Below, piece after piece: positions 5,731-36,558 of a DNA stretch of 64,000 bases. The position numbers and the translations under genes were made by a program. The number at the start of each line of letters is the position of its first letter. The first letter of the stretch is position 1. Below the pieces are notes generated by a model. The model was not told the DNA's origin. It did not search any database and worked only from the letters and a program-made list of their open reading frames with translations. The stretch is from Mytilus trossulus (Eukaryota), in NCBI RefSeq assembly GCF_036588685.1, contig NC_086376.1, forward strand, positions 30,628,001-30,692,000, written 5' to 3'.

Positions 5731-5734
5731 AGAC

Positions 5735-10600: not shown

Positions 10601-10782
10601 AGGAACCATATCATGCATTGATAACTTGTATCTAGGAACCATGTCATACATTGATAACCTGTATCTAGGAACCATGTCATACATTGATAGCTTGTATCTA
10701 GGAACCATGTCATACATTGATAACCTGTATCTAGGAACCATATCATGCATTGATAACTTGTATCTAGGAACCATATCATGCA
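7680..10782 (-). repeat. 33-bp minisatellite array B (~90 units), + strand unit CTGTATCTAGGAACCATGTCATACATTGATAAC
   Basis: Tandem periodicity. Higher-order 858-bp (26-unit) duplication: the rare ATTAATAA variant occurs at ~9363 and ~10221. Left edge is degenerate; right edge is sharp. Confidence 0.97.
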
Positions 10783-13413: not shown

Positions 13414-16400
13414 TTACACCCTATCTAGTGCACATGTGAACTCTGTAAGGTTGAGTTGGTCTACATTTTCACCAACACAATGGCTCTTCTTGTGGAAGAA
13501 TTTACAGCAAGTAATGCACTTCACCTAAAAAAAGGAATATAAATATGTGATATAATTCCTGGTTACACCTTTTCTTGTACTTTATCATCTTGATATTTTT
13601 TAAAGACAAGTTCTCTGTATAAAGCCTTGTACTAATATTGATTTGATTGTTAAAAGTTCAATCCAAAGTACATAATTATCAACAAGTGATAATAATAAGT
13701 TATTAATCAAATATCTTTTTCTATAACTGCTATTCTATGGGGGTTATTAATCTATCATGCTTTTTTATAAGTTGAAAAAGAAGGGATCATGAAAATTCAA
13801 AGCTTTAAGGTAATCTAAATTTATAAATGAACAAGTTTTCAAAATATGTCAAATAAAATGTAAATACTTGCATTAAATTTTAAAACTTTTAAAAATTCAG
13901 GCCTTCACAATATTAAGATATAAGCTACACCTATCACCAAACAAATACATTGCTACAAAATACATTTTAAGTCAGATGTTAATGTGACTAAAATACCTTA
14001 TGGGAATAAACCTGGCTCTTATCTATCTAAAAAAAAATCTTGAGTAATTTGTTTTCTTTGTTGATAATGACAATCACAAAATGTTTATGACATTGTAGTG
14101 ACAATGTTGTATGTTAAGCAGAGGAATGAGCACTGTCAAATGTATTAATAGAGCATGATTTTTTTTTTTAAATCTGTGGTGCTGTCTTTTTTGGTAGCTG
14201 CCATGAATGTTTGCATTTAACAAAATAAAAATGTCATTTTCTTTTCTGACAAAAAATGTAAATTAACATAATTATAAGATGAAGACAGTTTAAAATAGTA
14301 CCAAGGGTTCTGCAACTGGGTTGGTGTGGTAACCACAACAAGGACAGCAGCCTTCCATATATCCTGTAATAGAAAAAATAAGTTATTAAGAGTTAAATGT
14401 GGAATAAAAGTTATCACACATTAATATTCAAAAGTAAAAATTATTAAGTTAACATTTTTATATAATTCTTCAGTTCTGGAAGTAGATCAAGAAAAAGACA
14501 GATAATTGTGTGAATCATTGGTTTCATCAAAAAGCAAATAAGATTAAACAAAATCTGGTACATTTAATATGTAATAAAATGCCATTAGAATGATTGAAAG
14601 TTACCTTCAAACATCATCAGACTGCGGGCAATACTTTTCCTTTTCTGATTCGATTCAGCTGGCGTTATATGTAACGAAGTTCTAGCCAGGTATTTGTCTG
14701 CAAACTTATAAAAAAAATCAAATTATACACTTAATTAAAGTAGCCCAAAGGTTTTGTATATTTACTGTAATATGTTTTTATGAACAGTAACTAGTAACAG
14801 TTTGTATGTATACAACAGGGATCATGTACTGCCAAATACTGATACCCCATGTAGGCAATGAATGTGAATATGCATTGTACAGTATCAAAGTGTACTCAAT
14901 TCTAATTTTTAAGGAAGTTCTGATTAGCCAAACGGGGATGAAATTAAATTAATTTCTTTTTCAGACAAATTTAGACAAAAATAATAGACTAATTTTAATA
15001 CAAGGCATGTGTGTAAACAGACAAAATAAATTCCTTTGATTGTATGTATTCCTCTTCCTTTTTCCCCTACTTATTAGTTATTGTAACAACTGATCAACTA
15101 CCCATTGTCATCTACTGGTATATGTTCTTTTATACAAAGAAATAGTAAAGTAAAGTTAAGAATTAGATAACCATAAATTAAGGGAAGAAAACTGAATCTG
15201 GTTTATCATAACACCACCAGCATTCTTTTCTTTTTATTTGAATGAGGTAAACACGTTACTAAGAAAACATATTTCTGTGAAAGAGAAAGCAGGTCAATAC
15301 AATACACACCATTAGGCAATAAATTCCACAGCTGGATCCGTCCTGTTGCTTGGAATGAGTTGGTACCTCTAGGTTCCACTCTTTATCTATAACAGCAGCA
15401 TCTGCTGGAAACTGGAGTAGAAGTTGTTCAATGAATTTTCTGAAATGAAAAAAAACAAATATGACATTGACCATTGACCAGTCACATTGGACTGATATCT
15501 TTTAGAAAAATATTTGCTAAATCCTTTTATAAACCTAATGCAACCTCACTTTCACCTTGTATAACTGAATTGCATGTAGTTTGTAAATACCCAGATGTTC
15601 CCTTTATATGACAGAAATATTCCTTGCCCAATAGGTTTAAGGAGTCATTAAAGAAATGTCATAGATGTTTCACAGTTTGAATGAAATCTGATAAGTGATG
15701 AAATATATATTTGTATGTTGAAACCAGTTCTAAGAGGTTTATAAAATTACTGTTTTTATTGCAATTGTAGGCAACATTATCAATATGTTCAAAGGATATG
15801 TACTGTGTCATATTTGAACATATATGAATATGATGACTGATTTGAATGGTTGAAGTAAAATTATTGTGCTCATTTATTAAATGTTAATTTATTATTTGTG
15901 CATTGACACAAATCGACAAATTCAAAATAATTACAGGTACATTTTGTTGTTGAGTCTTTGGTGCAGCATTGAGCATTGATATTTTTTTATTTTATTTTAC
16001 AATATTTTTAACATGTTCTTACTTCCATCTTAAAGGAACTGTCCTCATCTGGAAATCTGTTTCACCCATTGGATTAAGGAAGATAATCCTTCCATTTAAA
16101 GGTTCTATAATCTAAAATAAACAGGTTAAATAAAAAAATCTATCGCTATCTCTCCTTATAAAAGCACATGCATGCAAATCTAATATACAGTGTATTATAT
16201 AAAAAGCAAAACATCTTAACCTTTTCAGTGTAGTGTCAGTCAGTCTTATCACATTAATCTAGCATGCTATGCATTACTAAATAGTAGCGCAATGTTTCAG
16301 TCAGGGTATGGTTATGGCCTTACCATTATTAAATATGCAAGAAATAAGGAAATGTAGCTCTTATCAACAAATGTATATTTTTATAAATTGGCTTGAATGC

Positions 16401-19400
16401 CCTAACCATTTTCTGGTTCATTTCCATCTTTCTTACCTAGCATATATTATTTTGTGAATATTGAATTTGCTTTTAAATATTATATGTTATTCAGGTCTCA
16501 GACAGGGTATATACTGTGACATTCCTGGCTTAGAGTTTATATCGCCTGAGCCGAGGCGAAGGGGATATAAGCCCTAAGCCAGGAATGTCACAGTATATAA
16601 CCTTTCTGAGACCTGAATTACACATACATTACGGATTACCCCTGACTTTTAATGTTATTTTCCAGTGCAGGTAATTGTTGACAACATATATATATTGAAA
16701 AATCAAACCTGATATATTCAGCGTACGTGAAGGATTTTCTTATTTGCTGTGAACATAATTTTATCATGTATGTAATAATTTTTAATAACACTTTTAACAT
16801 TAAATTTAAGTATTAATAGTGTAAATTGCGTGATTTTGTATCAAAAATGTATTATTGACTGAAGCACGTCATTCTTTTCCCTCTGTGAGCCTCTGACAGT
16901 CTGATAGCTTTTGACTACATCACATAGTAACTGGTGTTATGATGCCTTTTTGAGGTTCCAATTGGAGAGAAAAACATGGTATAAACCCCAGCAGTTTCCT
17001 GAATATATACTGACATCTCTGTGTTGTTATCCAATCACAAACCTCGACACATTTGTAATCCGTAATATATTGATATATTTTCATAATCATTTCATTAAAC
17101 AAAATTATACTAATAGAAAAAAGATGAACACTTACCAACAAATCCCAGTGACTTCCACTTTGGTGGTATGCACCAATTATGAACTCAGTAGACATCAATA
17201 TATTCTACAAAAAAAAAAAAAAAATCAAATCATACAAAATCTTAGCACATGGAATTCATCTCCTGAATAATTCACCTCCTGAATTTCATTTCTATACAAA
17301 TAAAAATGTCTAAACAAATGAAAATATATATAAAAAATATGTTACTTAGATCACTTAGTTTTAGAAAATAGTTGTTATATTTGATAGAGTCACACATTAT
17401 ATCACTAGACAAACTACATGTAGCTTCATCAGCTCATCATTAATCAGTTAACATTAAACACTGGATGCTGTTGAGAAGTTTTTGCAGGTTATTTTACATT
17501 TCATACAAACAGATCTAATGGTTTTGTGACATTGAATAAGTTTCTTCAGGGTTCATTCTGTCGGTAAAAAAAAATAAAACTGTTTTCCCTTTTCTAAAAT
17601 GGAACGGATTATTTCTTTGACTGGATCTTAGGATCTTTTACAACAGAAATTTTAGGTAATCTGCCATAAACTCCATCTTCTTACCTTAAATATCATGTAC
17701 TGCAGCCATATTTTTTTAACACCAACAGCTCCTAGAAATTAAATTCAGACAAAACTAAATCATTGTCTCCTAATTTTCCAATACAGTATGCCATCAAACA
17801 GGACCCTCCCAAATTTGGTTTTATTGATGTACTTTATAGTATAATATAACAAAAATTGTGTTTTTAAAACAGTAATTATACAGTTCCCATATAGGAACTA
17901 TACCTTATCATTCCGTGCAGGAACATATTCCCCATTTAAAATGTTGTTGGTTGTTGTCACTAACATATGCTTTATTTTTATACCGTTTGCCATCTCTCTA
18001 TTGGCAACAAGTTCTAGGTAGGCGTCCATTATCTGAAAAAGAAAAAACAATGACAAAATACAATGTTATGCCTTAGCATAAATATATTACACATCAACAC
18101 TGAAAACCAAAAAAAATATCAGTGGTCACAGATGCTATTAATGTTGCAAAAAAAAAAAGCATCTACATTTTATCATTTAAAGAATATACTCAATTTGATT
18201 GCAATCTCCATGTATATAACATAATTGACATATATTTACTTTATCAGTAACCCAGCTGTTCTTTTTCAGAGAGTAAATATCTCCATACGTGATGCTAGTT
18301 CCATATACTTTTGCAATAAAGTAATGTGACCAGGGTGCAATTTGGTCCTCCCAAATCTTTGCTATCTTAATAGCAGCTGAAAAAGAAATATTGCTTAATC
18401 ACAACAATAAAAGAAAAAGTAGTAAATATCAAATAATCATGTGTCCCACACCTTCATTAATATGCATATTAGCAAAACAATCAAAAAAACATTGAAGATA
18501 ATAATAGAATTCATATTCATGACAAAAATCTTCTTTTTGCTAATTTGTATTGCTGATCATTTATTTTTTGTTGTTGATATCTATCTTCTTTAAAGGGCAA
18601 AGAGTTATATAAAGAGTCACATTCTAATAAGTATTATGACAAATTTTAACTTGCTTGTAGAGCTTGCCTTGCTTATCAAAGTTTCTTTTTATCTATCATA
18701 AGTTTAAAGACATAAAAAAATGGTATTTTTTTTATTACACAACAATAACTCTTATAATTGTTCAACTGACAACATAACCTTGCAAACTTAAGACATCATT
18801 TAGCCAATATAAAGATTCTCATTATCCGTCAATTTTTTACGATAATAGGCAGAAATTTAAAAAAAAAAAATGGTTAGGGCAATAACTTTAGTTATAAATA
18901 TCTCAAAATTATTCCATTACCAACCTTTTTGTCTATCAATTTCATTGGTTGACAAGGAATCATCTTCAATTGATGTTGAAACACCTTTAAAAGAAATAAG
19001 TAGACATGAAAAGGTAACCATATCTTGTCTTATATATAGTAATAAATCATATTCTGAAACAAAAACATCATGGGGTGATGCTAAGAGTTGTTATCCTGTG
19101 ATTTTGTAACTGCTGTCATCCTTTTTTTTTCTCTTGACTATTTTTTATCTATACACATAACAGGAAATTCATCTTATCAAAGGAACCCTGTCACATAAAG
19201 GGAGATAATTCAAATTATAGGGATGATTACATAGATAAAGTTAAATTATAGAATAAAAAGATGTTGTGGATTGAGCTATTTTAATATGTAGCAAGAAAAC
19301 AAGTCTGATTTTTTCTTTTATTATCTGGAAACATGATATAAAAGCTATCTTTTCAATTATATATGAAAACTCGAGGGTTAGTTCCTTTTTTCACACAAAT

Positions 19401-22400
19401 TTGGATTTACCATCCATAATCTATACAAACCTGAAATATTTGCACAGGTAATGTGAAAAAAAAATCTGGTGACTCTGGTTATTATTGAAAAAAAGATTGA
19501 TCAGAAATACATTATGACAACTTATATACACCTTAAATTAAGGGCAAAAACTTTAAATAAATTGTACAAAAAGATGAATGAATCATGTATGAATGAAACT
19601 GTACAAGTTTTTTTTATTTTTTAATGTTGGTCTGATAAAATCACCCTTACCTATCAGCTGAAAACATTTTTAATCTGAAACAATTGGACATTTGAACATA
19701 AGTGTTTCTTTTTTTCATAGCAGTTACACATTGTTAGACAACTAAGGCCAAAATTATTAAATGAATATAAGTACCTGCATCAGGACTTGAATGCTCTACA
19801 AAAGAAATAATGGAACATATAAAACAGAAAGTTAACCAATGGTTTTTGTACTTTGAGTCGATTTAATGAATTTCAACCTTATCTATCATTTATTTGTAAA
19901 AGTTGGTTTAAAGATTTTATTTTTACATCACTGATATAAATTAAGGATCAGGTTACGCACTCACAAACAAGTTTAATCCTCTCCTTAACTCTGGTTTTGT
20001 CAATTACAAGTCAGTAGCAAGCGATTGAGTAGTTTTTGGCTAATGTCTGTCCTATTCAGTATTTTTACATATATAAACCAGATTTGCTAATAGGAATTGT
20101 CTGACATTTTAGGATAAAGTTATTAAAAGCTGCTTTGCCTATAGGGTGTAGGTATTGCTTATTATCTAGGGTCCTGAAGTGACATATATTTTCTTACATC
20201 TTGTCATTTACAAATTGAATAGTGTTTTTTAAAATAACTCATAGCTGGACTAACCTGTACACATTTTCTTCGGTTGGGACTCTTTAAAATCATCATCTTC
20301 CATTCTGTCTTTTGACGTACTGCAAAGGTAAATATTAAATTGGTCAACCAGATAATTTCTTTCACCTTTATTTCTCGCATGCATTAGGTCTATGGAAATA
20401 TTTTTCCTCATACACTTTAATCATTTACCAAGAAAAATAATTTGATTATTACTGGTAATGTACAAAGTAACAAGTCATGCTTTCATTAATATATGTGTTA
20501 AAAAAATAAACAGGCATAACTCTATAGAACAATTAAAGTGACACCCCTAAAATTCAAACTTGATGCATACATTTTTAGGGGAAATAAGCATTGTCTATAA
20601 GTTTCATAACATTTATTTGAGGCAAACTGGAAACAAAAAATTCAACACTTTTTCCATTTGTAAAGATGAATTACTCTAGAACAATGAAGTTTATGTCACA
20701 AAAAATCAACCTTGATCTGTATTTTGTAGTAATTATCATTGTTCATTAGTTTTGTGTATCAGTTTCATAACATTTAGTTGAGACAATCTGATGTTAGTAA
20801 TTCAATCAAACTTTTGGATATGCAGAGATATGTATGTACAGACAGACAAGGGTAAAATTGTATGCCCCCTCCGCTATAGCAGGGCATACAAATATGCACT
20901 GTGTGTACTATATATGTTGATAAACATTTAAATTAAATAATTTTGGTTTAAACAATGACAATATCTATAGTGTATATCCAATTTTTTTCGCCAATATACC
21001 TAATCCATACCTTGTGTCTGTAAATGTTTGTTCTGATTTACTGGAACATATTCCCTGAGAAGGAAAAAAGAAGAGTGCAATATAATAGTAATTTGTTCAT
21101 CATATATTGGAATATAATTGTAGTTTTGCAAAACAGTATAAAAGGACATGCTATTATTAACATGTCATTTCTACAATGAACATTTATGATACATTTTTGC
21201 AATGAATGTGGCACAGAGATTGATACAAAACAATAAATCATTGCTTTGTTTCTTTTTATATTATTCATATATTGCAAGACACAGAATTGATATCTTCATT
21301 GTGTAGTCTTGCATATGCTAAAATGATATGGCAATTAGTTTTTACCGTTAGAGGACACTAATATCAGAACAAAATTATGTAAAGACATAGCAAATAATTT
21401 GTAAACTTCTTACCTTTAAAACAAAAGTTTTGTATGACTCAACCACAGACACACATTGCGCCCTACTTAAACGTTCTTCTGAAAAAAACAGAATAATTCT
21501 TAAAATATCTACTGGGTATAAAAGAATGGTTAGAAATACCCTTTAGAAAACACCACCAACATGTATATGCTATATAAATCTTATGTACAAAACCTTATTT
21601 ATGTTGTAGAAATTATTTTTTTTTTTTAGATTTTTAGTAAAAGTTGTAAGTGTTTAATGGAATGCTATCACAAAGAGATGACAGAAGCACACAGTCTTTT
21701 GCTATGCATATGTCTGTAAAATTTCCATGGCTATGATACAGTTACTAAATATTATTACAAAAAAATCATTTTATGAAACACAAGAAGACTTCTTATGGAT
21801 ATGATTTTGGTATAAGGAGAAAAACAAAAATAAATTAAAATCATTATGGAGGTCCTTATTTCAAGTTTGATGACAAGGAGAAAAGCACTAATTATAAGGT
21901 TTAAGTATAAAAATTTGAATTCATAAACAATAAACTGATACATTTTAGGAAATTCACTTTTATTACCTGGTGAAAACAGATATGTGTCAGAAAACTTGTG
22001 ACTGGTACAACAACCTGGTACAAATTTAAAGGTATAAACTTAAATCTTAATTAAACACAACAAATATATATATTGTTCTTTAAAACTGTTGACCTATAAC
22101 CTGTTAATTTATACAAAGGAAAGGAAAAGTGGACAGTCATATTATATATTTTCCTACAATGGGTTGTTATTGAAGTTTAATGACACATGCATTTTTTCCC
22201 TGAAATGTCCTATAAATTCAATAAATTGTTCCAAATTCTAAATGACTTACTGTTTTTGTTGTCATTTGGTGACACAAAGGGTACCTCCTCAGGGTACCAT
22301 TCTGGGGCCAACTTTCGTATACCCCAGAATCCTCTCTGTATGTTGAGCCTGCTGAAAACTGGTAAATAGAAAAAAATGTATAGTTTCAATGTATGAAAAT

Positions 22401-25400
22401 TAAAGACCTATTTGATTTGTATTATCATCTCTAACAACTTAGTTGAAGTTGATATTTGTTATGAAATTTTCTTAAAACTTTTACAGAATGGTGATTTGGT
22501 ATGTCTACAGTTTGAATTTCAAATTTTGTTCGTCAATCAAAAAACACATAATGAAAATTGAACTTACAAATTTCTGAATTGAAAGTTAAATTGTGTACCT
22601 TTCAAAAATTTAGTCTGTTAAATAGCATAATATTTATTTTTAACACACAAAAAAATTAAGTCTCAACTAGTGCCATACAAACCAAAAAAGTGTGTGAAAT
22701 TGTGTATAAATATAAAACATACATGACAATAATTAGTTATTATATAGAAAGGTATAAGCAAAGCAAAAATTATAGTCCATATATATGTAAAGAGAAAATT
22801 TCCATGACAAAATTCCACATGAATCTAAAATACTCTGCACATATCTGTTAATGTAGGATATCATATTATATATATCATCTAAAACTTTCACCAAAAACAG
22901 GATTGATATGTGTTTCTGTTGGGAAAAATTGTTTAATCATTTACCTTCAATGCCAATTCTATTTATATTAAAAGTGTTCCATATTAACATGCAATGTGCT
23001 CATTTGTAGATCTATTAGTATTATATATATATATATATATTTATAAATATGAATATAATATTTTGTCTAAACGTCAGTCTAACAATGTAAGATCTGTAAA
23101 TATATATATCTTAGTAGTATGAGTTCACATCCCATTGAGGGAAGAACAGAAAATTGGCGTATGCAATTTACAGTTTTAACATTGTTGGGCTGTTATTTTA
23201 GACAAATTATATCTATTTATATGGAAGCATGGGTATATTCACACAATATCTTTTTACAAGTATGCATAAAATGGTACAGCTAGCTAGCATTTTAAACATG
23301 AAATACTTATTTGTATATAGAATCAATGATTAAATTTTCTTTTTTTTATCAACTTAGTTTTCTCGTTTGAATTGTTTTACATTGTCCTATCGGGTCCTTT
23401 TAAACCTATATGGTATGGGCTTTGCTCATTGTTGAAGGCCATCTATTGACCTACAGTTGTCAATGTCTGTGCCATTTTTGGTCTCTTGTGGACAGTTGTC
23501 TCATTGGCATTCATACCACATCTTCTTTTTTTTATATTTGTCACATTAAACAGAATTGGATATCTTCAAAAAAGGTTGAAAATAAACATGGTATTCAATT
23601 TTTTCCATAAAATGTATGCTGGCTTCTACAGTGAATAAGTAATAAGTGCTGAATTAGGTTTTTTTCCAGAATTATGAGAAGATCAATAATATTCAGTACT
23701 AATTTTCAATAAAGAAAACAGTGTTTTAGGTTCATTTACTATTCAAGCTAAGACTAACTTGCATATAAATCTAGTAAATAATTGGGTAGTCTACTTCAAA
23801 GTTTAATGAAGGAGTAGAATGATATTATGATACAGATAAGTAGAAGCAGTCACCACAGCTAGGAACACTTAGTACAAGTTGTAGAGACACCATAAGCTAC
23901 ACATTATATAATAATCTCAAATCACAAATACTTACCAAATATAATCTCCTTTAATATAATTGTAGTGATATTGTTATAGTTAATAAAGACAAATATATAA
24001 AAAAGCAAATGATTCATACATTGCATTTAAAAAGTAATAATAGTATATCAATTTTATCTTTTTCCTATGGGGTCAGTTTTTAATTGCTTGAGGAAGCTGG
24101 AGATCTACTGACCTTCAGTACAAAAACTGATGATCGTAGTCACTTAAGATAGAAGTCAGGTACACAAGCAGGTGATGCAGCGGTAAAACAAATTAAACCA
24201 CTGGATCACCAAGTATAACTAACATTTATACATAAATGTATTAAAAATATAACTATGCTGACCAATTTTCTTTTCTATAAACAAATACTGTCCTGTTTGC
24301 AATATCATATATCATATATTATTGTAAAGACCGTTTAATGCAGTGTCATACTGTAAAAACAAAAATTTTCATGGAGGATTTTTTTTTTTTAAATTCGTGG
24401 AAAGAATATTATATCCACAAAATTGAAACCTCCAAGGAAATTTAACTTACATATGATATCACTTCCCTTTACTGGAAACCACGAATGTAAATTCCCATGA
24501 AATCTTATATAGAGACAAAACCATGAAATTTTTATCCCACTAAAAAATAAATGTTTCTGCAGTATCTGTCAACATTAAAAGGTGTAAAATGCCTAATGGT
24601 GTCTGCCTTTTTAAAAACTCATTATTGCATGTAGAAATGGTAACATCCTAAATTTGATAAATAACTGTAACAAACATGATCAAAACACTACAACTATCTA
24701 AAACTTACCATCTGTGTTGACAATATCTGCCATCACCTTCCTTATGTTATGTGTATTGGCATTGTCTATATCCATGGTTGCCACTCCTTCAAAATATGAA
24801 TATTTTTAAATGTAAAGCACATGTGTATCAGCTTGTAGTATTTGTTACATGCTTATTATTCATAGATGATATGGCATGGTTACCTGTTTTTAATATTGTC
24901 TGCCTGTTGAATAATGTATTACTTTTGTTGGAGTTGCTCTCTTAAGATTTCAACATTGCTTATGTTTGTTAGTATATCAATGTTTTCATTTTTATTGTTG
25001 CAAAGTGTTTGTCCATCTTTATTGATTTAATGAACTTGTTCATGTCTTGGCATTATCTGCATAGCACATAAAAAATTAAAAATTAAAAACATAAGAAAAT
25101 AATAATTCAATCCCAAACTTACACTTAACTATATAATCATTTATGATACATATGTCAACTTTGTCTGGGCTAAGTGGAAAAAAGAAGTTTGGCTTTGACA
25201 AAGGCTAAAAACCACACCCCATAAACCACAATATCCGTCAGATCAGAACTTTTAATTAAGGTTGCCAACAAACAAATTGCATTTGCACTCAGTATCATTA
25301 ATTAAAGGGGGAAAAAACACATTGCTCTGTACATCTTATCATTCAAAAATAAAAGAAAAATACCTAAATTTATTGAGGGTGCACAGACTTCTATCTTTGT

Positions 25401-28400
25401 TGCAGCCTGGACAAAATCATTGGCAATCCTTTGCCCAAAGCCTTTCATGTGGTCAGGACCTGAAATTACATTTATCATCAAAATATAAATACACATGTAA
25501 AAAAGGAAACTCCATGTACATTTTAAAATAAACTGTTTTGCTTATAAAAAAGATACCTTATCTTCTCAGTTGAAATTGGTAAAAATTCTATTTCTATCAA
25601 TAGCAATATTTCATACTTCAAATACTTGTGTCTTCAATAAAAATGAAACCATATCTGTGCTTACCACAAAACTCAACTGTTTTTGAATCTTTGTTAATCA
25701 TTATAGATACAATAGTATCCCCTCTGTCCAACATCTTATTCACCTGCAAGTAAAAAGAAATTTATCAAACAAACTTGAATACTAGTCAAAACAGATCAAG
25801 CGTACAGAATATCATATATACATAAAAAGACATTGATAAAAATTCTATCTATAAATTATTTTTTTAATGTAAGCCTTTGTTAAAGAACACCATTTAGAAA
25901 AAAAATCTGAGTTTCAATGTAAAAATCTAATAAAGATACTGAAACATAAAAAGAAATGACACCTATTAAATGTTTGGTAATGAAAGTTGTTGCAAAGAAT
26001 ATGAGTTATTAAAGCTACTACTGCAATTGTAATTTGATGTTGAACTTACAACTGCCTTCACCTTTTCCCAATCTTCCTCACTTTTTCTGTCCTATAAATA
26101 TATAATAGAAATTATTTACATATTGGCACAGTAATTATGCACTTCCATTTTTTGTTGTTGCAAAAACTATAACAACAAATGGGAATCAAAGATAATGAAA
26201 CATGTAACACCTGTTAATATTGTAAAACAAGATGATATGTATATACATATAATGAATTATCGATATAGAGTCTTGATATATTATCTGTGCTCATAGATAA
26301 AGGTTTATGTTGTTCTAAGAAACTATCTATTTGCCTAGTATTTGCATTATCTATGGTTCTTAGGTATAGTCTGTATGAGTTGTCTTTGGTTCTATATACA
26401 ATTTTTATGTCTTGTCTGTGGTTCTTAGGTAAAGTCTATATGTAATGTTTGTGGTTCTTATATACAGTTTATATGTCTTGTCTGTGGTTCTTAGGTACAG
26501 TTTATATGTCTTGTCTGTGGTTCTTAGGTACAGTTTATATGTAATGTTTGTGGTTCTTTTATAGTTTATATGTATTGTTTGTGGTTCTTATGTACAGTTT
26601 ATATGTCTTGTCTGTGGTTCTTAGGTACAGTTTATAAGTCTTGTCTGTGGTTCTTAGGTACAGTTTATATGTCTTGTCTGTGGTTCTTACATACAGTTTA
26701 TATGTATTGTTTGTGGTTCTTAGGTACAGTTTATATGTCTTGTCTGTGGTTCTTAGGTACAGTTTATATGTAATGTTTGTGGTTCTTTTATAGTTTATAT
26801 GTCTTGTCTGTGGTTCTTAGGTAGAGTCTTTATGTCTGTGGTTCTAAGGTAGAGTCTTTATGTCTGTGGTTCTTAGGTACAGTCTATATCTATTGTCTGT
26901 GGTTCTTAGGTATAGTCTTTATGTCTTGCCTGTGGTTCTTACATACAGTTTATATGTCTTGTTTGTGGTTCTTAGGTACAGTTTATATGTATTGTTTGTG
27001 GTTCTTAGGTACAGCTTATATGTCTTGTTTGTGGTTCTTAGGTACAGTTTATATGTCTTGTTTGTGGTTCTTAGGTACAGTTTATATGTATTGTTTGTGG
27101 TTCTTAGGTACAGTTTATAAGTCTTGTCTGTGGTTCTTAGGTACAGTTTATGTTTCTGGTCTGTGGTTCTTAGGTACAGTTTATATGTCTTGTCTGTGGT
27201 TCTTACATACAGTTTATATGTCTTGTCTGTGGTTCTTACATACAGTTTATATGTATTGTTTGTGGTTCTTAGGTACAGTTTATATGTCTTGTCTGTGGTT
27301 CTTAGGTACAGTTTATATGTATTGTTTGTGGTTCTTTTATAGTTTATATGTATTGTTTGTGGTTCTTATATACAGTTTATAAGTCTTGTCTGTGGACCTT
27401 AAGTAGAGTCATTATGTCTGTGGTTCTTAGGTAGAGTCTTTATGTCTGTGGTTCTTAGGTACAGTCTATATCTATTGTCTGTGGTTCTTAGGTATAGTCT
27501 TTATGTCTTGCCTGTGGTTCTTACATACAGTTTATATGTATTGTTTGTGGTTCTTATATACAGTTTATATGTCTTGTCTGTGGTTCTTAGGTACAGCTTA
27601 TATGTCTTGTCTGTGGTTCTTATATACAGTTTATATGTAATGTTTGTGGTTCTTTTATAGTTTATATGTCTTGTCTGTGGTTCTTAGGTAGAGTCTTTAT
27701 GTCTGTGGTTCTTAGGTAGTCTATATCTATTGTCTGTGGTTCTTAGGTATAGTCTTTATGTCTTGCCTGTGGTTCTTATATACAGTTTATATGTCTTGTC
27801 TGTGGTTCTTATGTACAGTTTATATGTCTTGTCTGCGGTTCTTTTATACAGTTTATATGTCTTGTCTGTGGTTCTAAGGTAGAGTCTTTATGTTTGTGGT
27901 TCTTATGTACAGTCTATATCTATTGTCTGTGGTTCTTAGGTACAGTTTATATGTCTTGTCTGTGGTTCTTATATACAGTTTATATGTATTGTTTGTGGTT
28001 CTTATATACAGTTTATATGTCTTGTCTGTGGTTCTTAGGTACAGCTTATATGTCTTGTCTGTGGTTCTTATATACAGTTTATATGTCTTGTCTGTGGTTC
28101 TTAGGTACAGCTTATATGTCTTGTCTGTGGTTCTTATATACAGTTTATATGTCTTGTCTGTGGTTCTTATATACAGTTTATATGTCTTGTCTGTGGTTCT
28201 TAGGTACAGCTTATATGTCTTGTCTGTGGTTCTTATATACAGTTTATATGTCTTGTCTGTGGTTCTTAGGTACAGCTTATATGTCTTGTTTGTGGTTCTT
28301 ATATACAGTTTATATGTCTTGTCTGCGGTTCTTTTATACAGTTTATATGTCTTGTCTGTGGTTCTAAGGTAGAGTCTTTATGTTTGTGGTTCTTATGTAC

Positions 28401-31158
28401 AGTCTATATCTATTGTCTGTGGTTCTTAGGTACAGTTTATATGTCTTGTCTGTGGTTCTTATATACAGTTTATATGTATTGTTTGTGGTTCTTATATACA
28501 GTTTATATGTCTTGTCTGTGGTTCTTAGGTACAGCTTATATGTATTGTTTGTGGTTCTTATATACAGTTTATATGTCTTGTCTGCGGTTCTTTTATACAG
28601 TTTATATGTCTTGTCTATGGTTCTTAGGTACAGCTTATATGTCTTGTCTGTGGTTCTTATATACAGTTTATATGTATTGTTTGTGGTTCTTATGTACAGT
28701 TTATATGTCTTGTCTGTGGTTCTTAGGTACAGCTTATATGTCTTGTCTGTGGTTCTTATATACAGTTTATATGTATTGTTTGTGGTTCTTATGTACAGTT
28801 TATATGTCTTGTCTGTGGTTCTTATGTACAGTTTATATGTCTTGTCTGTGGTTCTTATATACAGTTTATATGTATTGTTTGTGGTTCTTATATACAGTTT
28901 ATATGTCTTGTCTGTGGTTCTTAGGTACAGTTTATATGTCTTGTCTGTGGTTCTTATATACAGTTTATATGTATTGTTTGTGGTTCTTATATACAGTTTA
29001 TATGTCTTGTTTGTGGTTCTTATATACAGTTTATATGTCTTGTTTGTGGTTCTTATATACAGTTTATATGTCTTGTCTGTGGTTCTTAGGTACAGTTTAT
29101 ATGTCTTGTCTGTGGTTCTTAGGTACAGTTTATATGTATTGTTTGTGGTTCTTTTATAGTTTATATGTATTGTTTGTGGTTCTTATATACAGTTTATATG
29201 TATTGTTTGTGGTTCTTATATACAGTTTATATGTCTTGTTTGTGGTTCTTATATACAGTTTATATGTCTTGTCTGTGGTTCTTTTATAGTTTATATGTAT
29301 TGTTTGTGGTTCTTTTATAGTTTATATGTATTGTTTGTGGTTCTTATATACAGTTTATATGTATTGTTTGTGGTTCTTATATACAGTTTATATGTCTTGT
29401 TTGTGGTTCTTATATACAGTTTATATGTCTTGTCTGTGGTTCTTAGGTACAGCTTATATGTCTTGTCTGTGGTTCTTACATACAGTTTATATGTATTGTT
29501 TGTGGTTCTTATATACAGTTTATATGTCTTGTCTGTGGTTCTTTTATAGTTTATATGTATTGTTTGTGGTTCTTATATACAGTTTATATGTATTGTTTGT
29601 GGTTCTTATATACAGTTTATATGTCTTGTTTGTGGTTCTTATATACAGTTTATATGTCTTGTCTGTGGTTCTTAGGTACAGCTTATATGTCTTGTCTGTG
29701 GTTCTTACATACAGTTTATATGTCTTGTTTGTGGTTCTTATATACAGTTTATATGTATTGTTTGTGGTTCTTTTATAGTTTATATGTATTGTTTGTGGTT
29801 CTTATATACAGTTTATATGTATTGTTTGTGGTTCTTATATACAGTTTATATGTCTTGTTTGTGGTTCTTATATACAGTTTATATGTCTTGTCTGTGGTTC
29901 TTAGGTACAGCTTATATGTCTTGTCTGTGGTTCTTACATACAGTTTATATGTATTGTTTGTGGTTCTTATATACAGTTTATATGTCTTGTCTGTGGTTCT
30001 TATGTACAGTTTATGTTTCTGGTCTGTGGTTCTTAGGTACAGTTTATATGTCTTGTCTGTGGTTCTTAGGTACAGCTTATATGTCTTGTCTGTGGTTCTT
30101 ATGTACAGTTTATATGTATTGTTTGTGGTTCTTATATACAGTTTATATGTCTTGTCTGTGGTTCTTATGTACAGTTTATGTTTCTGGTCTGTGGTTCTTA
30201 GGTACAGTTTATATGTATTGTTTGTGGTTCTTATATACAGTTTATATGTCTTGTCTGTGGTTCTTATGTACAGTTTATGTTTCTGGTCTGTGGTTCTTAG
30301 GTACAGTTTATATGTAATGTTTGTGGTTCTTTTATAGTTTATATGTCTTGTCTGTGGTTCTTAGGTAGAGTCTTTATGTCTGTGGTTCTTAGGTAGTCTA
30401 TATCTATTGTCTGTGGTTCTTAGGTATAGTCTTTATGTCTTGCCTGTGGTTCTTATATACAGTTTATATGTCTTGTCTGTGGTTCTTATGTACAGTTTAT
30501 ATGTCTTGTCTGCGTTCTTTTATACAGTTTATATGTCTTGTCTGTGGTTCTAAGGTAGAGTCTTTATGTTTGTGGTTCTTATTTACAGTCTATATCTATT
30601 GTCTGTGGTTCTTATGTACAGTTTATATGTCTTATCTGTGGTTCTTATGTACAGTTTATATGTCTTGTCTGTGGTTCTTATGATAGTCTTTATGTCTTGT
30701 CTGTGGTTCTTAGGTACAGTCTATATGTATTGTAAATCCCGGCATCCCGAAAGCGGAAATGAAGAATTCCCGGATCCCGAAAGGATCAATCCGGAAATCC
30801 CGAGCTTATTAACAGCCGATACCGGAGTCCTGATAAAGGTCCTATCCCCCCTCATTTGACGCAAATGGTAGCCGAAAATGACTGAAGTAAACAGACATTA
30901 CTACCCTCAAGAATACAAAAAGGTGAAGTAACTTTGGTATTTTCATCTTTTAATCAGTGGTAGATCCAAAATTGTTTATGAAGCGGCCCATAGACTGCCA
31001 CGAAGGCGGGACAGCTCCAGTCAGGCTGAAGTAATCCCTTGTCTAATCATCAATTGTTTCCAACAAAAAAGGGGGACATTTTTTTGCTTTAAAGTTTAAT
31101 GCAAAGGTTATATTTGCAATATGATGGTTCTATTTTAATGTGTTACCCTTTTCGGCAT
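13414..31158 (-). CDS. ~500-aa protein: NRF1/ewg/P3A2-like DNA-binding region + acidic linker + Ulp1/SENP (peptidase C48) domain + PHD finger
   Basis: Phase-consistent exons in transcript order: 31147-31158, 26050-26091, 25665-25743, 25364-25459, 24709-24786, 23936-23948, 22251-22351, 21414-21478, 21011-21054, 20255-20319, 19775-19795, 18925-18984, 18240-18376, 17904-18032, 17136-17204, 16023-16111, 15310-15439, 14605-14704, 14302-14363, 13414-13524 (1503 nt, no internal stop). C48 motifs: SLKKNSWVTDKIMDAYLELV, SHWDLLII, FLNPMG, QQDGSSCGIYCLMFADKYL. PHD: CPCC..VKCITCCKFFHKKSHCVG..FTCALD. The 3' ten exons are secure; the 78-nt and 13-nt exons are less so. Confidence 0.82.
15310..18376 (-). CDS. 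Ulp1/SENP-like cysteine protease (C48) catalytic exons of the gene above
   Basis: W-x-T-D-x-I-M-D-A-Y-L motif, catalytic His in HWDLL (exon 17136-17204), oxyanion Gln and catalytic Cys in QQDGSSCG (exon 15310-15439). Confidence 0.9.
16484..17070. mobile_element. Non-autonomous element with long terminal hairpin (Crypton-like), intronic
   Basis: ~140-bp near-perfect palindrome at 16484-16625 (TTCAGGTCTCAGA..ATATACTGTGACATTCCTGGCTTAG / CTAAGCCAGGAATGTCACAGTATAT..TCTGAGACCTGAA) with a GCCGAGGCGAAGG loop. Second inverted pair ATTACGGATTAC (16628) / GTAATCCGTAAT (17056). Confidence 0.6.
20500..20892 (-). mobile_element. HINE/pearl-like (Helentron-associated) non-autonomous element, decayed
   Basis: Two diverged internal repeats (AACTCTAGAAC...CTTGAT...GTTTCATAACATTT), GACA microsatellite and terminal hairpin TATGCCCC..GGGCATA. 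Confidence 0.5.
23355..23535 (+). mobile_element. Abundant SINE-like repeat (..TTGTCTCATTGGCAATCATACCACATCTTCT family)
   Basis: The same family recurs in either orientation at ~34490-34890, 40545-40810, 44620-44820, 48170-48450, 49730-49810, 51270-51580 and 52395-52510. Confidence 0.8.
24349..24564. mobile_element. TA-flanked MITE (TACTGT...CAGTA), Tc1/mariner-like
   Basis: TACTGTAAAAAC...GTTTCTGCAGTA termini with internal CCACGAA-type repeats. Relatives at 42746-42940 and 61824-62033. Confidence 0.5.
26340..30732 (+). repeat. 33-bp minisatellite array C (~130 units), consensus TCTGTGGTTCTTAGGTACAGTTTATATGTCTTG, inside intron 1 of the Ulp1 gene
   Basis: Tandem periodicity with recurrent 31-bp and shorter deletion variants. 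Higher-order blocks, e.g. 229-bp and ~490-bp offsets between near-identical ORFs. Confidence 0.97.
30735..30855 (-). mobile_element. Truncated MITE (ATGAGGGGG.. termini family)
   Basis: Reverse complement of the 5' half of the element at 58228-58427 (ATGAGGGGGGATAGGACCTTTA...CGGGATTTC). Confidence 0.75.
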
Positions 31159-31340: not shown

Positions 31341-31559
31341 AACCACAACTATTATACCTCCCGTTTTTGTAAAAACAACAGCACTCGAGGTCTGACAGTA
31401 TTTTACCAAGAAATGCACAAAATATTCAAAAAGAAGGCCTAGAAAATTTAAATATTGGTATGCACACATACTCCCCTGTCAGCACAGACAATTATATTTT
31501 TGTAAACGCGCCAAACTCGTTTCTAATATTTATAATAGAACTGAAAAGAAAATTGAAAT

Positions 31560-32015
31560 GGAAATGGGGAATGTATCAAAGAGATAACAACATGACCAAA
31601 GAGCAGATAACAGCCATAGGTCACCAATGGGTCTTCATTGCAACGAGAAAATCCCGAAACATGAGACTTGGGTGGATCCTGAGTCATATAAAGGGGTTCC
31701 TAACCCAGGACAAATTTGGGGGGGGGGGGGGGGGGGTGTGTTAAACTACATGTCCCCATTCAAATGCATTGATCGTCCAGTAAAGAAAGGGGGGGTTCCA
31801 ACATGTCCAACCCTCAGCCCCCTGGATCCGTGCCTGTGAGGCATGCTTTAGCTTGCCATTAAACAAAAATGTATACTAGTTGAGTGATAATGGACGTCAT
31901 ACTAAACTTTTCAATACAAAGAAAAAGAAACTAAAATAAAAATCATACAAAGGTCACAAAGGCCATAACTTCTGGCTCCTGAATAAGAAAAAGTGCAAAA
32001 TGCAGTGGGGATAAA
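31560..32015 (-). mobile_element. SINE-like repeat interrupted by a GGATCC-type MITE (~31666-31838)
   Basis: Flanks match 5735-5905 in reverse. The insert has inverted ends GGTGGATCC...GGATCCGTGCCTG and poly-G tracts. Confidence 0.65.
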
Positions 32016-32244
32016 AGCCTTTACTGTAAATCCTGAAATTACAATTATATAAATCATCTCGCATCTTTGTGCATTTCTTGAAATTGGTCATATTAATAAA
32101 TGCATGCAATATTTTCAGAAAATTTCAATATATAGGCTTTTTTAAAAAAAGTCAATCTTGTGCATGATTATCAATGATTATACTCGCACAATTAACACAT
32201 GTGGTTCTCAAAACTCAAAGGTGTCTATGCTATTTATGACAACT

Positions 32245-32725
32245 TTTATACCCCCGCTTTCAAAAAAGGGGGGTATACTGTTTTACCTCTGTCTGTCAGT
32301 CCGTCCGTCCGTCAGTCAGTCAGTCCGTCCCATGAATATTTTTCTTCGCATTTTTCGCAGGAACTACAATACAAGGATTTCTGAAATTTGGTTTCAGGGT
32401 TTATCTAAGTCATTTATACCATGTGATGCGTTTTCAGATTGATCACTTGTCAACTTCCTGTTAACCGAACACTTGTATGATTTTACACATGATACTGAGC
32501 CAAGTTGAAAATTTTCGTCACATTTTTCTCAGGAACTACAATACAAGGATTTCTTTAATTTTGTTTTAGGATTTATATAAGTCAGCTATACCGTGTGATG
32601 CGTTTTCAGATTCATCACTCGACAACTTCCTGTTTACCGAACACTTGCATATTTTTACACTATTTATATTATCCACTTGCGGCGGGGGTATCATCAGTGA
32701 GCAGTAGCTCGCAGTTTCACTTGTT
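32245..32725 (+). mobile_element. HINE/DINE-1/pearl-like Helentron-associated element
   Basis: TT-flanked. Subterminal IR ATACCCCCGC / GCGGGGGTAT, (CCGT/CAGT)n microsatellite, two ~175-bp internal tandem repeats, 3' hairpin AGTGAGC..GCTCGC. Confidence 0.8.
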
Positions 32726-33304
32726 AATAAAGTATAAATTTACAAAATATGTTTAGAACTATATGATTTTTATGTTTTTAAGCATAGATATAGTAGGTCA
32801 GGATCTGCCAACTCTCACTGACTGACTGAGCACATAAATTCAACACTAGTTTTTTGGTGTTGCTTAGTGTTTTGTTTTGTTTTGTTTTTCTTTTCTGCAT
32901 CTTATGTTTTGCCTTGGCATTGTCAGTTTCTCTTTCATTGCCTTTGGTTTTTTTTGTTATGTTAAATAACAAGTCACATATAACATGTATAATCATGATA
33001 ATTAAGGTCCTTTTTAATTTTTAGGGATTTTAAATTTTTTATTTAAAGTTAGGGATTTTATTCATAAAAGGGGGGATTTTCCAGTACGTATACTATTAAT
33101 AATGCTTTGAGCAATTTTAATGAAACTTGGTGAATTATTTTTGTATAACATAAACATGATAATTTTCCTTTTAATTTTAAAAAAAAATCTGATTTATGTC
33201 ATTGTACTATCATGACTTGGGATTAGGATAGTCTCAAGAATGCTTTCACAAATTTTTATGAAACTTTGGTGAATTGTTTTTATATCTTGACATAAACACC
33301 CTTT

Positions 33305-33880
33305 TTATTATTATGACCCAAAGTGGAGGGGGCATAATGTTTAACACTTTATCGTTTGTCCGTCTGTCCCAAAGTTGTTTTTTGTTCTCTTACATTACTT
33401 TAGTTTGCCTCAAACAAATTCAATTAAACTTTTACAAAAGCTTGTTATCACAATACTCAGATCAAGTTTGAATTTTGGTGATGTCAGTGTTACTGTACTA
33501 GAGTATCAGAGTTATGCCCCTTTAGAAATGGGGAAAATATGCTGAATTTTTGGTTTCCTGTTTTCTAAACTTTAGTTTGTCTCAACCAAATGTTATGAAA
33601 TCAATACACAATGCTTATAACCACAAAATACAGATTAAGTTTGAATTTTGGTAGTGTCTCTTTTACTAAATTCTATAGTTATGTTCTTTAAAAATGGAAA
33701 AAATTGTTTCAGCCTTCTAACTTAAGTTTCCCTCAACCAAATTTTATTAAACTTTAAAACAATACTTTTTATCACAATTTTAATCAGATCAATTTCAAAT
33801 TTTTGTAGTAAAACTTTTACCGTTCTTCAGTTATGTTCCTTTAAAACTTTGAATAATATGCAAGCTGGAGTATCATTCCC
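33305..33880 (+). mobile_element. Second, decayed HINE-like element
   Basis: 5' hairpin, GTCC microsatellite remnant, three diverged ~165-bp internal repeats. Confidence 0.55.
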
Positions 33881-35954: not shown

Positions 35955-36390
35955 ACATTTCCTTAAGGGAAATTTGATGTTCAGAAATTTCCTTGGAGGA
36001 AATTTGAAGAACAATGATTTCCTCAGAGGAAATTTGTTGTCTTGAATTTTCCTCCAAGGAAAAGTGTTTGTCAAAAATTTCCTCACAGGAAAAAAAATTT
36101 CCTCAAAGGAAAATGTGAAGCTACAAATTTCCTCACAGGAAAAAGTATTTCCTCAAAGGAAAATTTGAAGCTGCAAATTTCCTCAAAGGAAAATTTGAAG
36201 CTGCAAATTTCCTCAAAGGAAAAAGAATTTCCTCTAAGGAAAAAGAATTTCCTCTAAGGAAATAATTATGCAGCAAATTCCCTAAGGGAAATCTTTTTCC
36301 CTTGAGGAAAAAACAATTTCCCTTGAGGAAAAATCTTTTTCCTTCAGGGAAATTTGATTTCCCTTGAGGAAAAGTACTTTTCCTCTGAGG
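35955..36390. repeat. Cluster of palindromic TTTCCTCAAAGGAAA-type repeats (subterminal-repeat-like)
   Basis: About 20 copies of TTTCC(N5)GGAAA at ~20-31 bp spacing, switching polarity (TTTCCTCAAAGGAAA to TTTCCCTTGAGGAAA) near 36280. Confidence 0.9.
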
Positions 36391-36558
36391 AATTTGTTGA
36401 AAAAAGGGGCATAACTTTTTCAACAGTGGTGCTAGAGCCAAATTTTTTTAGGACAAATATCAGGGAACCAATACCAACCAAGTTATCAACTTTGTTTTGA
36501 CTTAAGTCTAAAAATTAAGGTGACAACTTTTGCACTCAGCGGAATTGCAAACTTGTCC

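What the first reader, a model, noticed from the sequence alone, without database searches (positions are those of the whole stretch)
21414..31158. N-terminus resembles the NRF1/erect-wing/P3A2 DNA-binding domain, fused to a SUMO protease
Seen: ..WEKVKAVVNKMLDRGDTIVSIMINKDSKTVEFCGPDHMKGFGQRIANDF..MDIDNANTHNIRKVMADIV..RGFWGIRKLAPEWYPEEVPFVSPNDNKNKERLSRAQCVSVVESY. From memory, this parallels NRF1 in order: helix-G-strand-strand-FG dimerisation unit, then VDKMTQAQLRAFI, then PGWG....PIWWPEDIPW, then a helix ending in Y. Inference: a transposon-borne NRF1-like domain. It would bear on a possible TE link for this small transcription-factor family and gives an unusual NRF1-like + C48 + PHD architecture.
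Basis: inference. Interest (0 to 1): 0.8.

Follow-up and report, generated by a model that had tools for sequence, protein, structure and literature searches.

The report
NRF1-like domain on a SUMO-protease gene
A mussel gene joins a diverged copy of the NRF1 transcription factor's dimerisation and DNA-binding module to a SUMO-protease-like domain and a PHD-like finger, a combination that public annotation calls only "sentrin-specific protease-like".

Summary
On the minus strand, seven exons (ATG at 31158, last one ending at 21414) have canonical GT-AG sites and matching phases. They encode the quoted peptides.

The NRF1 reading is supported, but only through relatives. Pfam sees nothing in the window's exons. 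A profile of the core exon plus paralogous exons found a bivalve protein family. Profiles built from those natural proteins alone hit only NRF1 in the whole PDB (8k4l, E 7e-7 and 3e-6). Profile-profile comparison with this genome's own NRF1 exons gave E 9e-9. Two family members pass Pfam's Nrf1_DNA-bind cut-off. AlphaFold models of two natural homologues have NRF1 as top Foldseek hit, at non-significant E-values (0.02-0.03).

An oyster transcript-sized contig (P0045, 507 aa) carries the NRF1-like module, C48 protease and PHD finger in one protein, and the window's exons are colinear with it.

"Transposon-borne" is not supported here. The N-terminal exons are single copy, and the nearby repeats are separate insertions. 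The C48-PHD module, however, has transposase-linked relatives.

Two of NRF1's three base-reading residues differ, the protease's catalytic Asp is Asn, and the PHD finger's last zinc ligand is lost. No RNA evidence could be obtained. This is a new variant of a known kind, of moderate interest.

The parts
31147..31158 (-). Coding part of the first exon: ATG plus three codons (basic, M-P-K-R), then donor GTAACA.
   Evidence: The basic start resembles the homologues' N-termini (P0010, P0020). Not confirmed by RNA.
26050..26091 (-). E1: start of the first helix of the dimerisation unit (..EEDWEKVKAV).
   Evidence: AG acceptor, GTAAGT donor, phase 0. Aligns with the homologues' W-containing helix.
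25665..25743 (-). E2: end of the helix, then strand-turn-strand ending in ..EFCG (the MADS-like part of the dimerisation unit).
   Evidence: Fifth-best of 3253 segments with P0045, at residues 12-51.
25364..25459 (-). E3: the two helices after the strands (..HMKGFG..IANDF..).
   Evidence: Weak colinear hit to the family profile, positions 30-58. Phase 1 in and phase 1 out.
24709..24786 (-). E4: linker end and first helix of the DNA-binding domain (..NIRKVMADIV..). It holds the Arg that corresponds to NRF1 R206.
   Evidence: (E 9e-6 against P0014).
22251..22358 (-). E5: core loop of the DNA-binding domain, RGFWG-x5-P-x-WYP-EE-VPF-x-SP.
   Evidence: E 1.2e-16 to the natural-protein profile. 68% identical to P0045.
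21414..21478 (-). E6: last helix of the DNA-binding domain (..LSRAQCVSVVESY..).
   Evidence: E 2e-6 against P0005; 60% identical to P0045.
18240..18376 (-). C48 exon: N-terminal motif (..SLKKNSWVTDK).
17904..18032 (-). C48 exon (IMDAYLELV..). Both junctions are phase 0.
   Evidence: Matched by eye to P0045 (INAYLALL..); no statistical hit.
17136..17204 (-). C48 exon with the catalytic His (..GSHWDLL).
   Evidence: Matched by eye to P0045 (..ENHWVLL..).
16023..16111 (-). C48 exon with the third triad position, here Asn (..IIFLNPMGE..) where relatives have Asp (..ILDSMNGE..).
   Evidence: The C3 duplicate also has Asn.
15310..15439 (-). C48 exon with the oxyanion Gln and the catalytic Cys (..KQQDGSSCG..).
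   Evidence: (E 4e-5). The 3' boundary is less certain.
13414..13524 (-). Last exon: second half of a PHD-like finger, then the stop codon. The final CxxC is reduced to C-A-L-D.
   Evidence: Compared by eye with the P0045 C-terminus.
26350..30733 (.). Minisatellite inside the first intron. It is not coding for this gene.
16475..17080 (.). A 600-bp repeat with inverted ends, inserted in a protease intron. Not part of the gene's function.
   Evidence: more than 40 copies at 91-94% identity.

Best explanation
This is a spliced, single-copy, minus-strand gene of a bivalve, running from ATG 31158 to the stop at 13414-13416. By inference the animal is a mytilid mussel.

The product starts with a basic stretch. 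It is followed by a module homologous to NRF1's dimerisation domain (MADS-like helix-strand-strand-helix), a linker and NRF1's DNA-binding domain. After a further, unresolved linker come a Ulp1/SENP-type C48 cysteine-protease domain and a PHD-like finger.

Shown here: the exons, their splice signals and phases; membership of a bivalve protein family; statistically supported homology of that family to NRF1; and the same four-part architecture in one natural oyster protein.

Inferred: the N-terminal module dimerises and binds DNA, probably not the NRF1 site GCGCATGCGC, because two of the three base-reading residues differ. It would thereby bring a SUMO-type (or other ubiquitin-like) protease and a histone-tail reader to particular chromatin sites. 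Removing SUMO locally from chromatin proteins is the most likely activity.

Whether this particular copy is still active is open.
For: Exons and phases.

Family membership:
- E5 scores E 1.2e-16 against a profile of natural proteins only, and E4, E6 and E3 follow colinearly.
- The paralogous exons share intron position and phase with E5.

Homology to NRF1:
- Family profiles hit only NRF1 in 177,635 PDB sequences: 8k4l_A at E 7.2e-7 and 2.7e-6, 8k3d_A at 5.3e-5. The alignment runs from the dimerisation strands to the WWP loop.
- hhalign of the family DNA-binding-domain (DBD) profile (A3, which also contains the window's E4-E6 and three paralog exons) against this genome's own NRF1 exons gives probability 95.7 and E 8.6e-9.
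- Pfam Nrf1_DNA-bind passes its cut-off in P0013 (25.4 bits) and P0021 (23.7 bits, model positions 60-170). It is the recurring sub-threshold hit in most other members.
- AlphaFold model of P0018: the three best Foldseek hits are NRF1 chains (8k3d_A, E 0.031, probability 0.96); the next hit is at E 7.
- AlphaFold model of P0014: the top Foldseek hits are 8k4l A and B, and the top VIA hit is the NRF1 dimerisation domain (Z 5.1), followed by SRF and MCM1. The NRF1 structure paper also names SRF as NRF1's closest fold (PMC10810270).

Architecture:
- P0045 (507 aa, on a 1782-nt contig) has Peptidase_C48 at 4.4e-16, PHD at 2.8e-4 and Nrf1_DNA-bind at 0.016 over residues 7-143.
- The window's five best segments are colinear with it.
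- The protease exons are phase-compatible.
Against: - No Pfam or own-genome PF10491 hit falls on the window's own exons. The link to NRF1 rests on relatives.
- The dimerisation half is weak by sequence alone (hhalign P 0.004, probability 8.7). By fold it ties with MADS boxes.
- Foldseek E-values are above 0.01 and TM scores about 0.35.
- NRF1's N242 and R244 are Ser and Asn here (with PMC10810270).
- The protease has Asn at the Asp position, and the PHD finger has lost its last Cys.
- Exons and introns diverged equally from the C3 partial duplicate (90.1% against 89.4%). This gives no sign of constraint.
- The exons between E6 and the first protease exon, and between the Cys exon and the last exon, are not resolved.
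- There is no RNA evidence.
Confidence: 0.72

Rival explanations
1. The gene is cargo of a DNA transposon, or was until recently. The candidates are a KDZ/Zisupton-type or a Ginger/MULE-type element. On this reading the NRF1-like module serves the element, for example by binding its ends or countering SUMO-dependent silencing.
For: - The nearest relatives of the C48-PHD module carry what look, by eye, like transposase-type N-termini: a SWIM-like finger in P0029 and a GPY/F-like integrase end in P0031 (Pfam named only the C48 and PHD parts).
- Ulp1+PHD tails on Ginger1 and Mutator transposases are published (PMC2836005).
- The oyster protein P0026 is recorded under four accessions on four contigs. 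This suggests recent copying.
- A KDZ-like ORF lies at 666-1505.
Against: - The N-terminal exons are single copy.
- Only a 3.5-kb piece of the protease part is duplicated, at C3:58839721-58843226.
- The KDZ-like piece is unique, 12 kb away and convergent.
- The repeat ending at 36568 is a self-contained 5.2-kb element with more than 20 copies that do not include the gene.
- No terminal repeats bracket the gene.
Confidence: 0.2
2. This copy is a decaying gene. The exons still read through, but the protein is no longer made or no longer active.
For: - Asn replaces the triad Asp, and the last PHD ligand is lost.
- Exon and intron divergence from the C3 copy are equal.
- A 5.2-kb repeat sits 200 bp upstream of the ATG.
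- A 4.4-kb minisatellite lies in intron 1, and another repeat is inserted in a protease intron.
Against: - All 13 recognised exons are open, with canonical, phase-compatible splice sites.
- The C3 fragment alone may account for the neutral divergence.
- Asn can take the third triad position in other cysteine proteases (general knowledge, not tested here).
Confidence: 0.25
3. The likeness to NRF1 is a shared short motif (GWG...P.WWP) reached by chance or convergence. On this reading the N-terminus is an unrelated domain.
For: - The window exon alone gives only E 0.26 to NRF1 and no Pfam hit.
- The fungal family PF11001 also matches the motif.
Against: - Profile E-values of 1e-6 to 1e-8 extend beyond the motif into the preceding helix and the dimerisation strands.
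- The domain order and linker are the same as in NRF1.
- The predicted folds pick NRF1 first for both halves.
- A true divergent NRF1 paralogue of this genome also hits PF11001, so that family looks related rather than rival.
Confidence: 0.07

Closest known systems
NRF1 / Erect wing / P3A2 (Pfam PF10491; structures 8k4l and 8k3d)
   Same: The order is the same: basic stretch, MADS-like dimerisation unit, linker, DNA-binding domain. The core motif has identical spacing (aromatic-W-G, five residues, P-x-W-[WY]-P-acidic-acidic-[VI]-P-aromatic). The Arg of the recognition helix (R206) and W224/G225 are kept.
   Different: Sequence identity is about 20%. N242 and R244 are replaced by Ser and Asn within a family-conserved S-P motif. 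There is no NRF1 activation domain; a protease and a PHD finger follow instead. The intron before the core exon is at a different place than in this genome's NRF1 genes.
Drosophila SU(VAR)2-1 / Ova (PMC7021753)
   Same: [quoted passage not shown]
   Different: [quoted passage not shown] No sequence comparison was made here.
Oyster 'sentrin-specific protease 1-like' / 'ubiquitin-like-specific protease 1' RefSeq models (P0026, P0027) and the longer transcript form P0045
   Same: The family and architecture are the same. The core exon is 68% and the last DBD helix 60% identical, and the protease exons are colinear.
   Different: The RefSeq isoforms retrieved here start inside the DNA-binding domain, and only the protease domain is annotated. 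The oyster protein keeps Asp in the triad and a complete PHD finger.
Ulp1-PHD tails of Ginger1 and Mutator transposases (PMC2836005)
   Same: A C48 domain is followed directly by a PHD finger. The closest C48-PHD relatives found here have what look by eye like SWIM-like or integrase-like N-termini.
   Different: No transposase domain is present in this gene, and it is not multicopy here.
Fungal YDR124W-like helical bundle domain (Pfam PF11001)
   Same: It matches the same core loop in most family members (best E 5.5e-5) and in a divergent true NRF1 paralogue.
   Different: All hits are below its cut-off. It covers only the core loop, and no dimerisation unit is matched.

Membership tests
NRF1/EWG/P3A2 (Nrf1_DNA-bind, PF10491) | The Pfam model scores above its gathering cut-off (23.5 bits). 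| tested here: not met
   The window's exons score nothing, and the own-genome scan finds no hit in the window. Among natural relatives, P0013 (25.4 bits) and P0021 (23.7 bits) pass. P0045 (15.4), P0014 and P0019 do not.
NRF1/EWG/P3A2 (Nrf1_DNA-bind, PF10491) | Significant profile-level similarity to authentic NRF1 sequences. | tested here: met
   The family profile hits only NRF1 in the PDB, at E 7.2e-7 and 2.7e-6. hhalign against this genome's own NRF1 exons gives E 8.6e-9.
NRF1/EWG/P3A2 (Nrf1_DNA-bind, PF10491) | DNA-binding-domain core loop GWG-x5-P-x-WWP-[ED][ED]-[IV]-P-W with this spacing. | tested here: met
   The window has FWG-x5-P-x-WYP-EE-V-P-F with the same spacing.
NRF1/EWG/P3A2 (Nrf1_DNA-bind, PF10491) | A MADS-like dimerisation domain upstream of the DNA-binding domain. 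| tested here: inconclusive
   The P0014 model shows helix-strand-strand-helix-helix. Its top VIA hit is the NRF1 dimerisation domain (Z 5.1), tied with SRF at 4.7. Sequence alone gives P 0.004.
NRF1/EWG/P3A2 (Nrf1_DNA-bind, PF10491) | Base-reading residues R206, N242 and R244 (PMC10810270). | tested here: not met
   The R206 equivalent is kept (N-I-R in E4). N242 is Ser and R244 is Asn (alignments).
NRF1/EWG/P3A2 (Nrf1_DNA-bind, PF10491) | A C-terminal NRF1 activation region. | tested here: not met
   The Pfam scan of P0045 shows C48 and PHD after the module and no NRF1 activation family.
Ulp1/SENP peptidase C48 (PF02902) | The Pfam model hits, and the fold-level relatives are SENPs. | tested here: inconclusive
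   The window's exons alone give no hit. The colinear homologue P0045 scores 4.4e-16 and hits SENP2 at 2e-14. The window's Cys exon scores E 4e-5 against a profile of C48-PHD relatives.
Ulp1/SENP peptidase C48 (PF02902) | Catalytic His, Asp and Cys plus the oxyanion Gln. | tested here: not met
   His, Gln and Cys are present. The Asp position is Asn, both here and in the C3 duplicate.
PHD finger (PF00628) | The C4-H-C3 set of zinc ligands. | tested here: inconclusive
   Only the last exon was identified. The final CxxC reads C-A-L-D, and the spacing after His is two residues longer than in P0045. The exon with the first ligands was not found.
DNA transposon carrying the gene (KDZ/Zisupton, Ginger1, MULE) | Several copies bounded by terminal repeats, with a transposase in the unit. 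| tested here: not met
   The N-terminal exons are single copy. No bracketing repeats were found. The KDZ-like piece is unique. The neighbouring repeat at 31361-36568 excludes the gene.

The most novel reading that the evidence does not exclude
The NRF1-type dimerisation-plus-DNA-binding module is not confined to a handful of transcription factors. It would be a portable DNA-targeting cassette of a wider superfamily that also reaches the fungal YDR124W-like domain. In bivalves it has multiplied and been coupled to a transposon-derived Ulp1-PHD module. That would give a site-directed SUMO-type protease that moves or has moved with mobile DNA (the oyster copies). It would tie the NRF1 family's history to transposable elements.
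Probability: 0.15. Interest if true: 0.75.

Novelty: new variant of a known kind. Interest (0 to 1): 0.55.

Why it matters
NRF1's DNA-binding fold was solved only in 2023 and is regarded as peculiar to a very small family. A diverged bivalve family with the same two-domain module widens that family. It also gives natural variants at two base-reading positions, which is useful for asking how the fold reads DNA.

The fusion to a C48 protease and a PHD finger predicts a sequence-targeted enzyme that removes SUMO or a related modifier on chromatin. No such architecture turned up in the paper library searched here, and current annotation misses it.

The link between the C48-PHD module and transposases, and the multiple recorded oyster accessions, make the transposon question testable in oyster genomes.

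Tried and rejected
- Exon-by-exon Pfam scans found nothing, not even C48, so they are uninformative at this exon size.
- The PF10491 scan of the whole genome found the two true NRF1 genes and weaker loci on C1, but not the window.
- A loose tblastn of the exons against the fetched loci gave only noise.
- Word-based protein searches gave few extra members.
Those letters were not sent to any database search afterwards. DNA queries were cut to avoid them, and they were masked in the local comparison. The local six-frame target files were made from the whole window.
I stopped that step and took exon coordinates by arithmetic instead.
All window evidence is exon by exon, and the folds are of natural homologues.
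- The idea of one 36-kb KDZ element spanning 148-36570 was rejected.
- The selection test against the C3 duplicate was uninformative.
Full report
WHAT IS THERE

The window is AT-rich animal DNA. It is C4:30628001-30692000 of a 1.3-Gb assembly. On the minus strand I find a first coding exon at 31158-31147: ATG and three codons, then donor GTAACA. Six further exons follow:
- E1, 26091-26050
- E2, 25743-25665
- E3, 25459-25364
- E4, 24786-24709
- E5, 22358-22251
- E6, 21478-21414

Each has an AG acceptor and a GT donor, and their phases fit one another.

Downstream lie five phase-compatible protease exons: 18376-18240, 18032-17904, 17204-17136, 16111-16023 and 15439-15310. A last exon, 13524-13417, is followed by a stop codon. 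I could not resolve the exons between E6 and 18376, or those between 15310 and 13524. Everything on the window was done exon by exon.

IS THE N-TERMINUS NRF1-LIKE?

Direct tests on the window fail. Pfam finds nothing in any exon, not even the protease. A scan of the whole genome with PF10491 finds two real NRF1 genes (C1:94.44 Mb and C1:66.79 Mb) and weaker loci near C1:10.45 Mb, but nothing in the window. The E5 open segment searched against the PDB does put NRF1 first, but only at E 0.26.

The way forward was through relatives. E5 is single copy, but about a dozen exons elsewhere in the genome carry the same core motif. They share with E5 the position and phase of the preceding intron, seven codons plus two bases before R-G-aromatic-W-G.

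A 37-position profile of these exons (A1) was searched against 1.84 billion proteins. It gave 21 hits at E<=0.001. Every hit that carries a name is from a bivalve: Mytilus, Potamilus, Argopecten, Dreissena and Solemya. Oyster (Crassostrea/Magallana) relatives were added by the later word search.

Profiles built only from these natural proteins give the following:
- In 177,635 PDB sequences they hit nothing but NRF1: 8k4l_A at E 7.2e-7 and 2.7e-6, and 8k3d_A at 5.3e-5. The alignment runs from the dimerisation strands through the linker and recognition helix to the WWP loop.
- They hit the window's E5 at E 1.2e-16, with E4, E6 and E3 following in colinear order.

Further support:
- hhalign of the family's DNA-binding part (alignment A3, which also includes the window's E4-E6 and three paralog exons) against the matching exons of this genome's own NRF1 genes gives probability 95.7 and E 8.6e-9.
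- Pfam's Nrf1_DNA-bind passes its own cut-off in two members, P0013 and P0021. In P0021 the match spans both halves. It is the recurrent sub-threshold hit in most other members.
- The dimerisation half alone is weak by sequence (P 0.004).

FOLDS

The folds are of natural homologues, not of the window's product.
- The AlphaFold model of P0014 (pLDDT 63.5) shows helix, two strands and two helices, then a linker and a long helix. Its best Foldseek hits are 8k4l A and B (E 0.02-0.04). The best VIA-align hit is the NRF1 dimerisation domain (Z 5.1, 67 residues), closely followed by SRF and MCM1 MADS boxes. The NRF1 structure paper likewise reports SRF as NRF1's nearest fold (PMC10810270).
- The model of P0018 (pLDDT 75; 80-92 over residues 1-77) has the three NRF1 chains as its only Foldseek hits below E 0.1 (8k3d_A, probability 0.96). 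The next hit is at E 7.

These scores are modest, but NRF1 comes first for both halves.

WHAT DIFFERS FROM NRF1

According to PMC10810270, R206, N242 and R244 read the bases. In the window the R206 position is kept (N-I-R in E4), and so are W224 and G225. N242 and R244 are Ser and Asn, inside an S-P motif that the whole family conserves. A DNA target other than GCGCATGCGC is therefore likely.

ARCHITECTURE

A word search with P0005 reached oyster RefSeq models named sentrin-specific protease 1-like or ubiquitin-like-specific protease 1. The isoforms retrieved start inside the DNA-binding domain.

Their 90% cluster also holds P0045, 507 aa, on a 1782-nt contig, which is the size of a transcript. 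P0045 has the whole N-terminal module, a C48 domain (4.4e-16), a PHD finger (2.8e-4) and a Nrf1_DNA-bind hit of 0.016 over residues 7-143. It also hits SENP2 at 2e-14.

With P0045 as query, the five best of the window's 3253 six-frame segments are E5, E6, the Cys exon, the first protease exon and E2, in protein order on the minus strand. So the fusion is real in a relative, and the window is colinear with it.

Direct RNA proof for this locus is missing.

STATE OF THIS COPY

- The protease has His, Gln and Cys, but Asn at the Asp position.
- The PHD-like end has lost its last Cys.
- A 3.5-kb partial duplicate of the protease part lies at C3:58839721-58843226. Exons and introns differ from it equally, 90.1% against 89.4%. 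This gives no evidence of constraint, although the fragment may be the neutral partner.

TRANSPOSON QUESTION

At this locus the claim fails.
- The N-terminal exons are unique.
- 31361-36568 is a separate 5.2-kb repeat with more than 20 copies at 96-98% identity. Those copies do not contain the gene. It has no long ORF.
- The KDZ-like ORFs at 666-1505 are on the plus strand, and 1-1571 is unique.
- The only long match between the two flanks is a shared minisatellite family.

The C48-PHD module does have a transposon flavour.
- Its nearest relatives carry, by eye, a SWIM-like or integrase-like N-terminus.
- Ulp1+PHD tails of Ginger1 and Mutator transposases are published (PMC2836005).
- One identical oyster protein is recorded under four accessions on four contigs.

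COMPARISON AND NOVELTY

The module is a diverged member of the NRF1 domain superfamily, not an NRF1 orthologue. The NRF1 domain outside NRF1/EWG is already known from Drosophila SU(VAR)2-1 (PMC7021753). I found no paper describing it on a C48 protease.

The fungal Pfam family PF11001 matches the same loop in this family and in a divergent true NRF1 paralogue. This hints at a wider superfamily.

VERDICT

The NRF1 likeness and the architecture are supported. The transposon carriage is not supported here. This is a new variant of a known kind.

- The protein atlas was unavailable.

Noticed in passing
window 31361-36568: A 5.2-kb repeat with more than 20 near-full copies at 96-98% identity across the genome. 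It has no ORF over about 100 aa. It ends about 200 bp upstream of the gene's ATG and abuts the ORF at 36520-37074. This is the 'terminus' of the other note on this window.
   Followed up: partly
window 16475-17080: A repeat of about 600 bp in more than 40 copies (91-94% identity). Its first 150 bp also match in reverse, so it has inverted ends (MITE-like). It is inserted in a protease intron and is absent from the C3 duplicate.
   Followed up: partly
window 26350-30733, 2434-5732 and 7961-10849: Three large minisatellites. The first two belong to one family (about 69% identity, same orientation). The first fills most of the gene's first intron. They create long spurious ORFs on both strands.
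   Followed up: partly
G000 C7:57859246-57873691 (L021, L028): Seven tandem copies, 2.0-2.6 kb apart, of an exon closely like E5 (..RGYWG..KPEFWP..FRSPSTN..), each with a good acceptor. What gene or satellite this represents was not worked out. Degenerate copies also lie at C3:58847310 and C3:58849135, 4-6 kb from the protease duplicate.
   Followed up: partly
G000 C1:10449268-10449390 and C1:10485984-10488017 (L026, L027/L034): Divergent NRF1-like exons that have lost the GWG but keep P-x-WWP. One of them hits both PF10491 (1.6e-8) and the fungal PF11001 (3.1e-5), which suggests the two Pfam families are related.
   Followed up: partly
P0001 (Mytilus galloprovincialis VDI08314.1): This gene model joins an E5-like exon, identical over 30 residues to C5:51026816 of this genome, to a C-terminal part containing a ..TDTDS.. 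motif. From memory this recalls protein-primed DNA polymerases of Maverick/Polinton elements. Not tested.
   Followed up: no
window 666-869 and 1326-1505 (+): ORF pieces that, by eye, look like the end of a KDZ-type transposase (..DNACNLH.., ..DNMHWGNH..). The DNA at 1-1571 is unique in the genome. 1572-2325 is an old repeat with many copies at about 70% identity.
   Followed up: partly
Nothing was laid, and the letters were kept out of later database searches.
   Followed up: no
P0014 against G000: The closest complete stand-alone family member, Mytilus galloprovincialis LOC143046834, has no near-identical locus in this genome. Its best match is the window's E5 at 47% identity. Either the species differs or the gene is absent here.
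   Followed up: no
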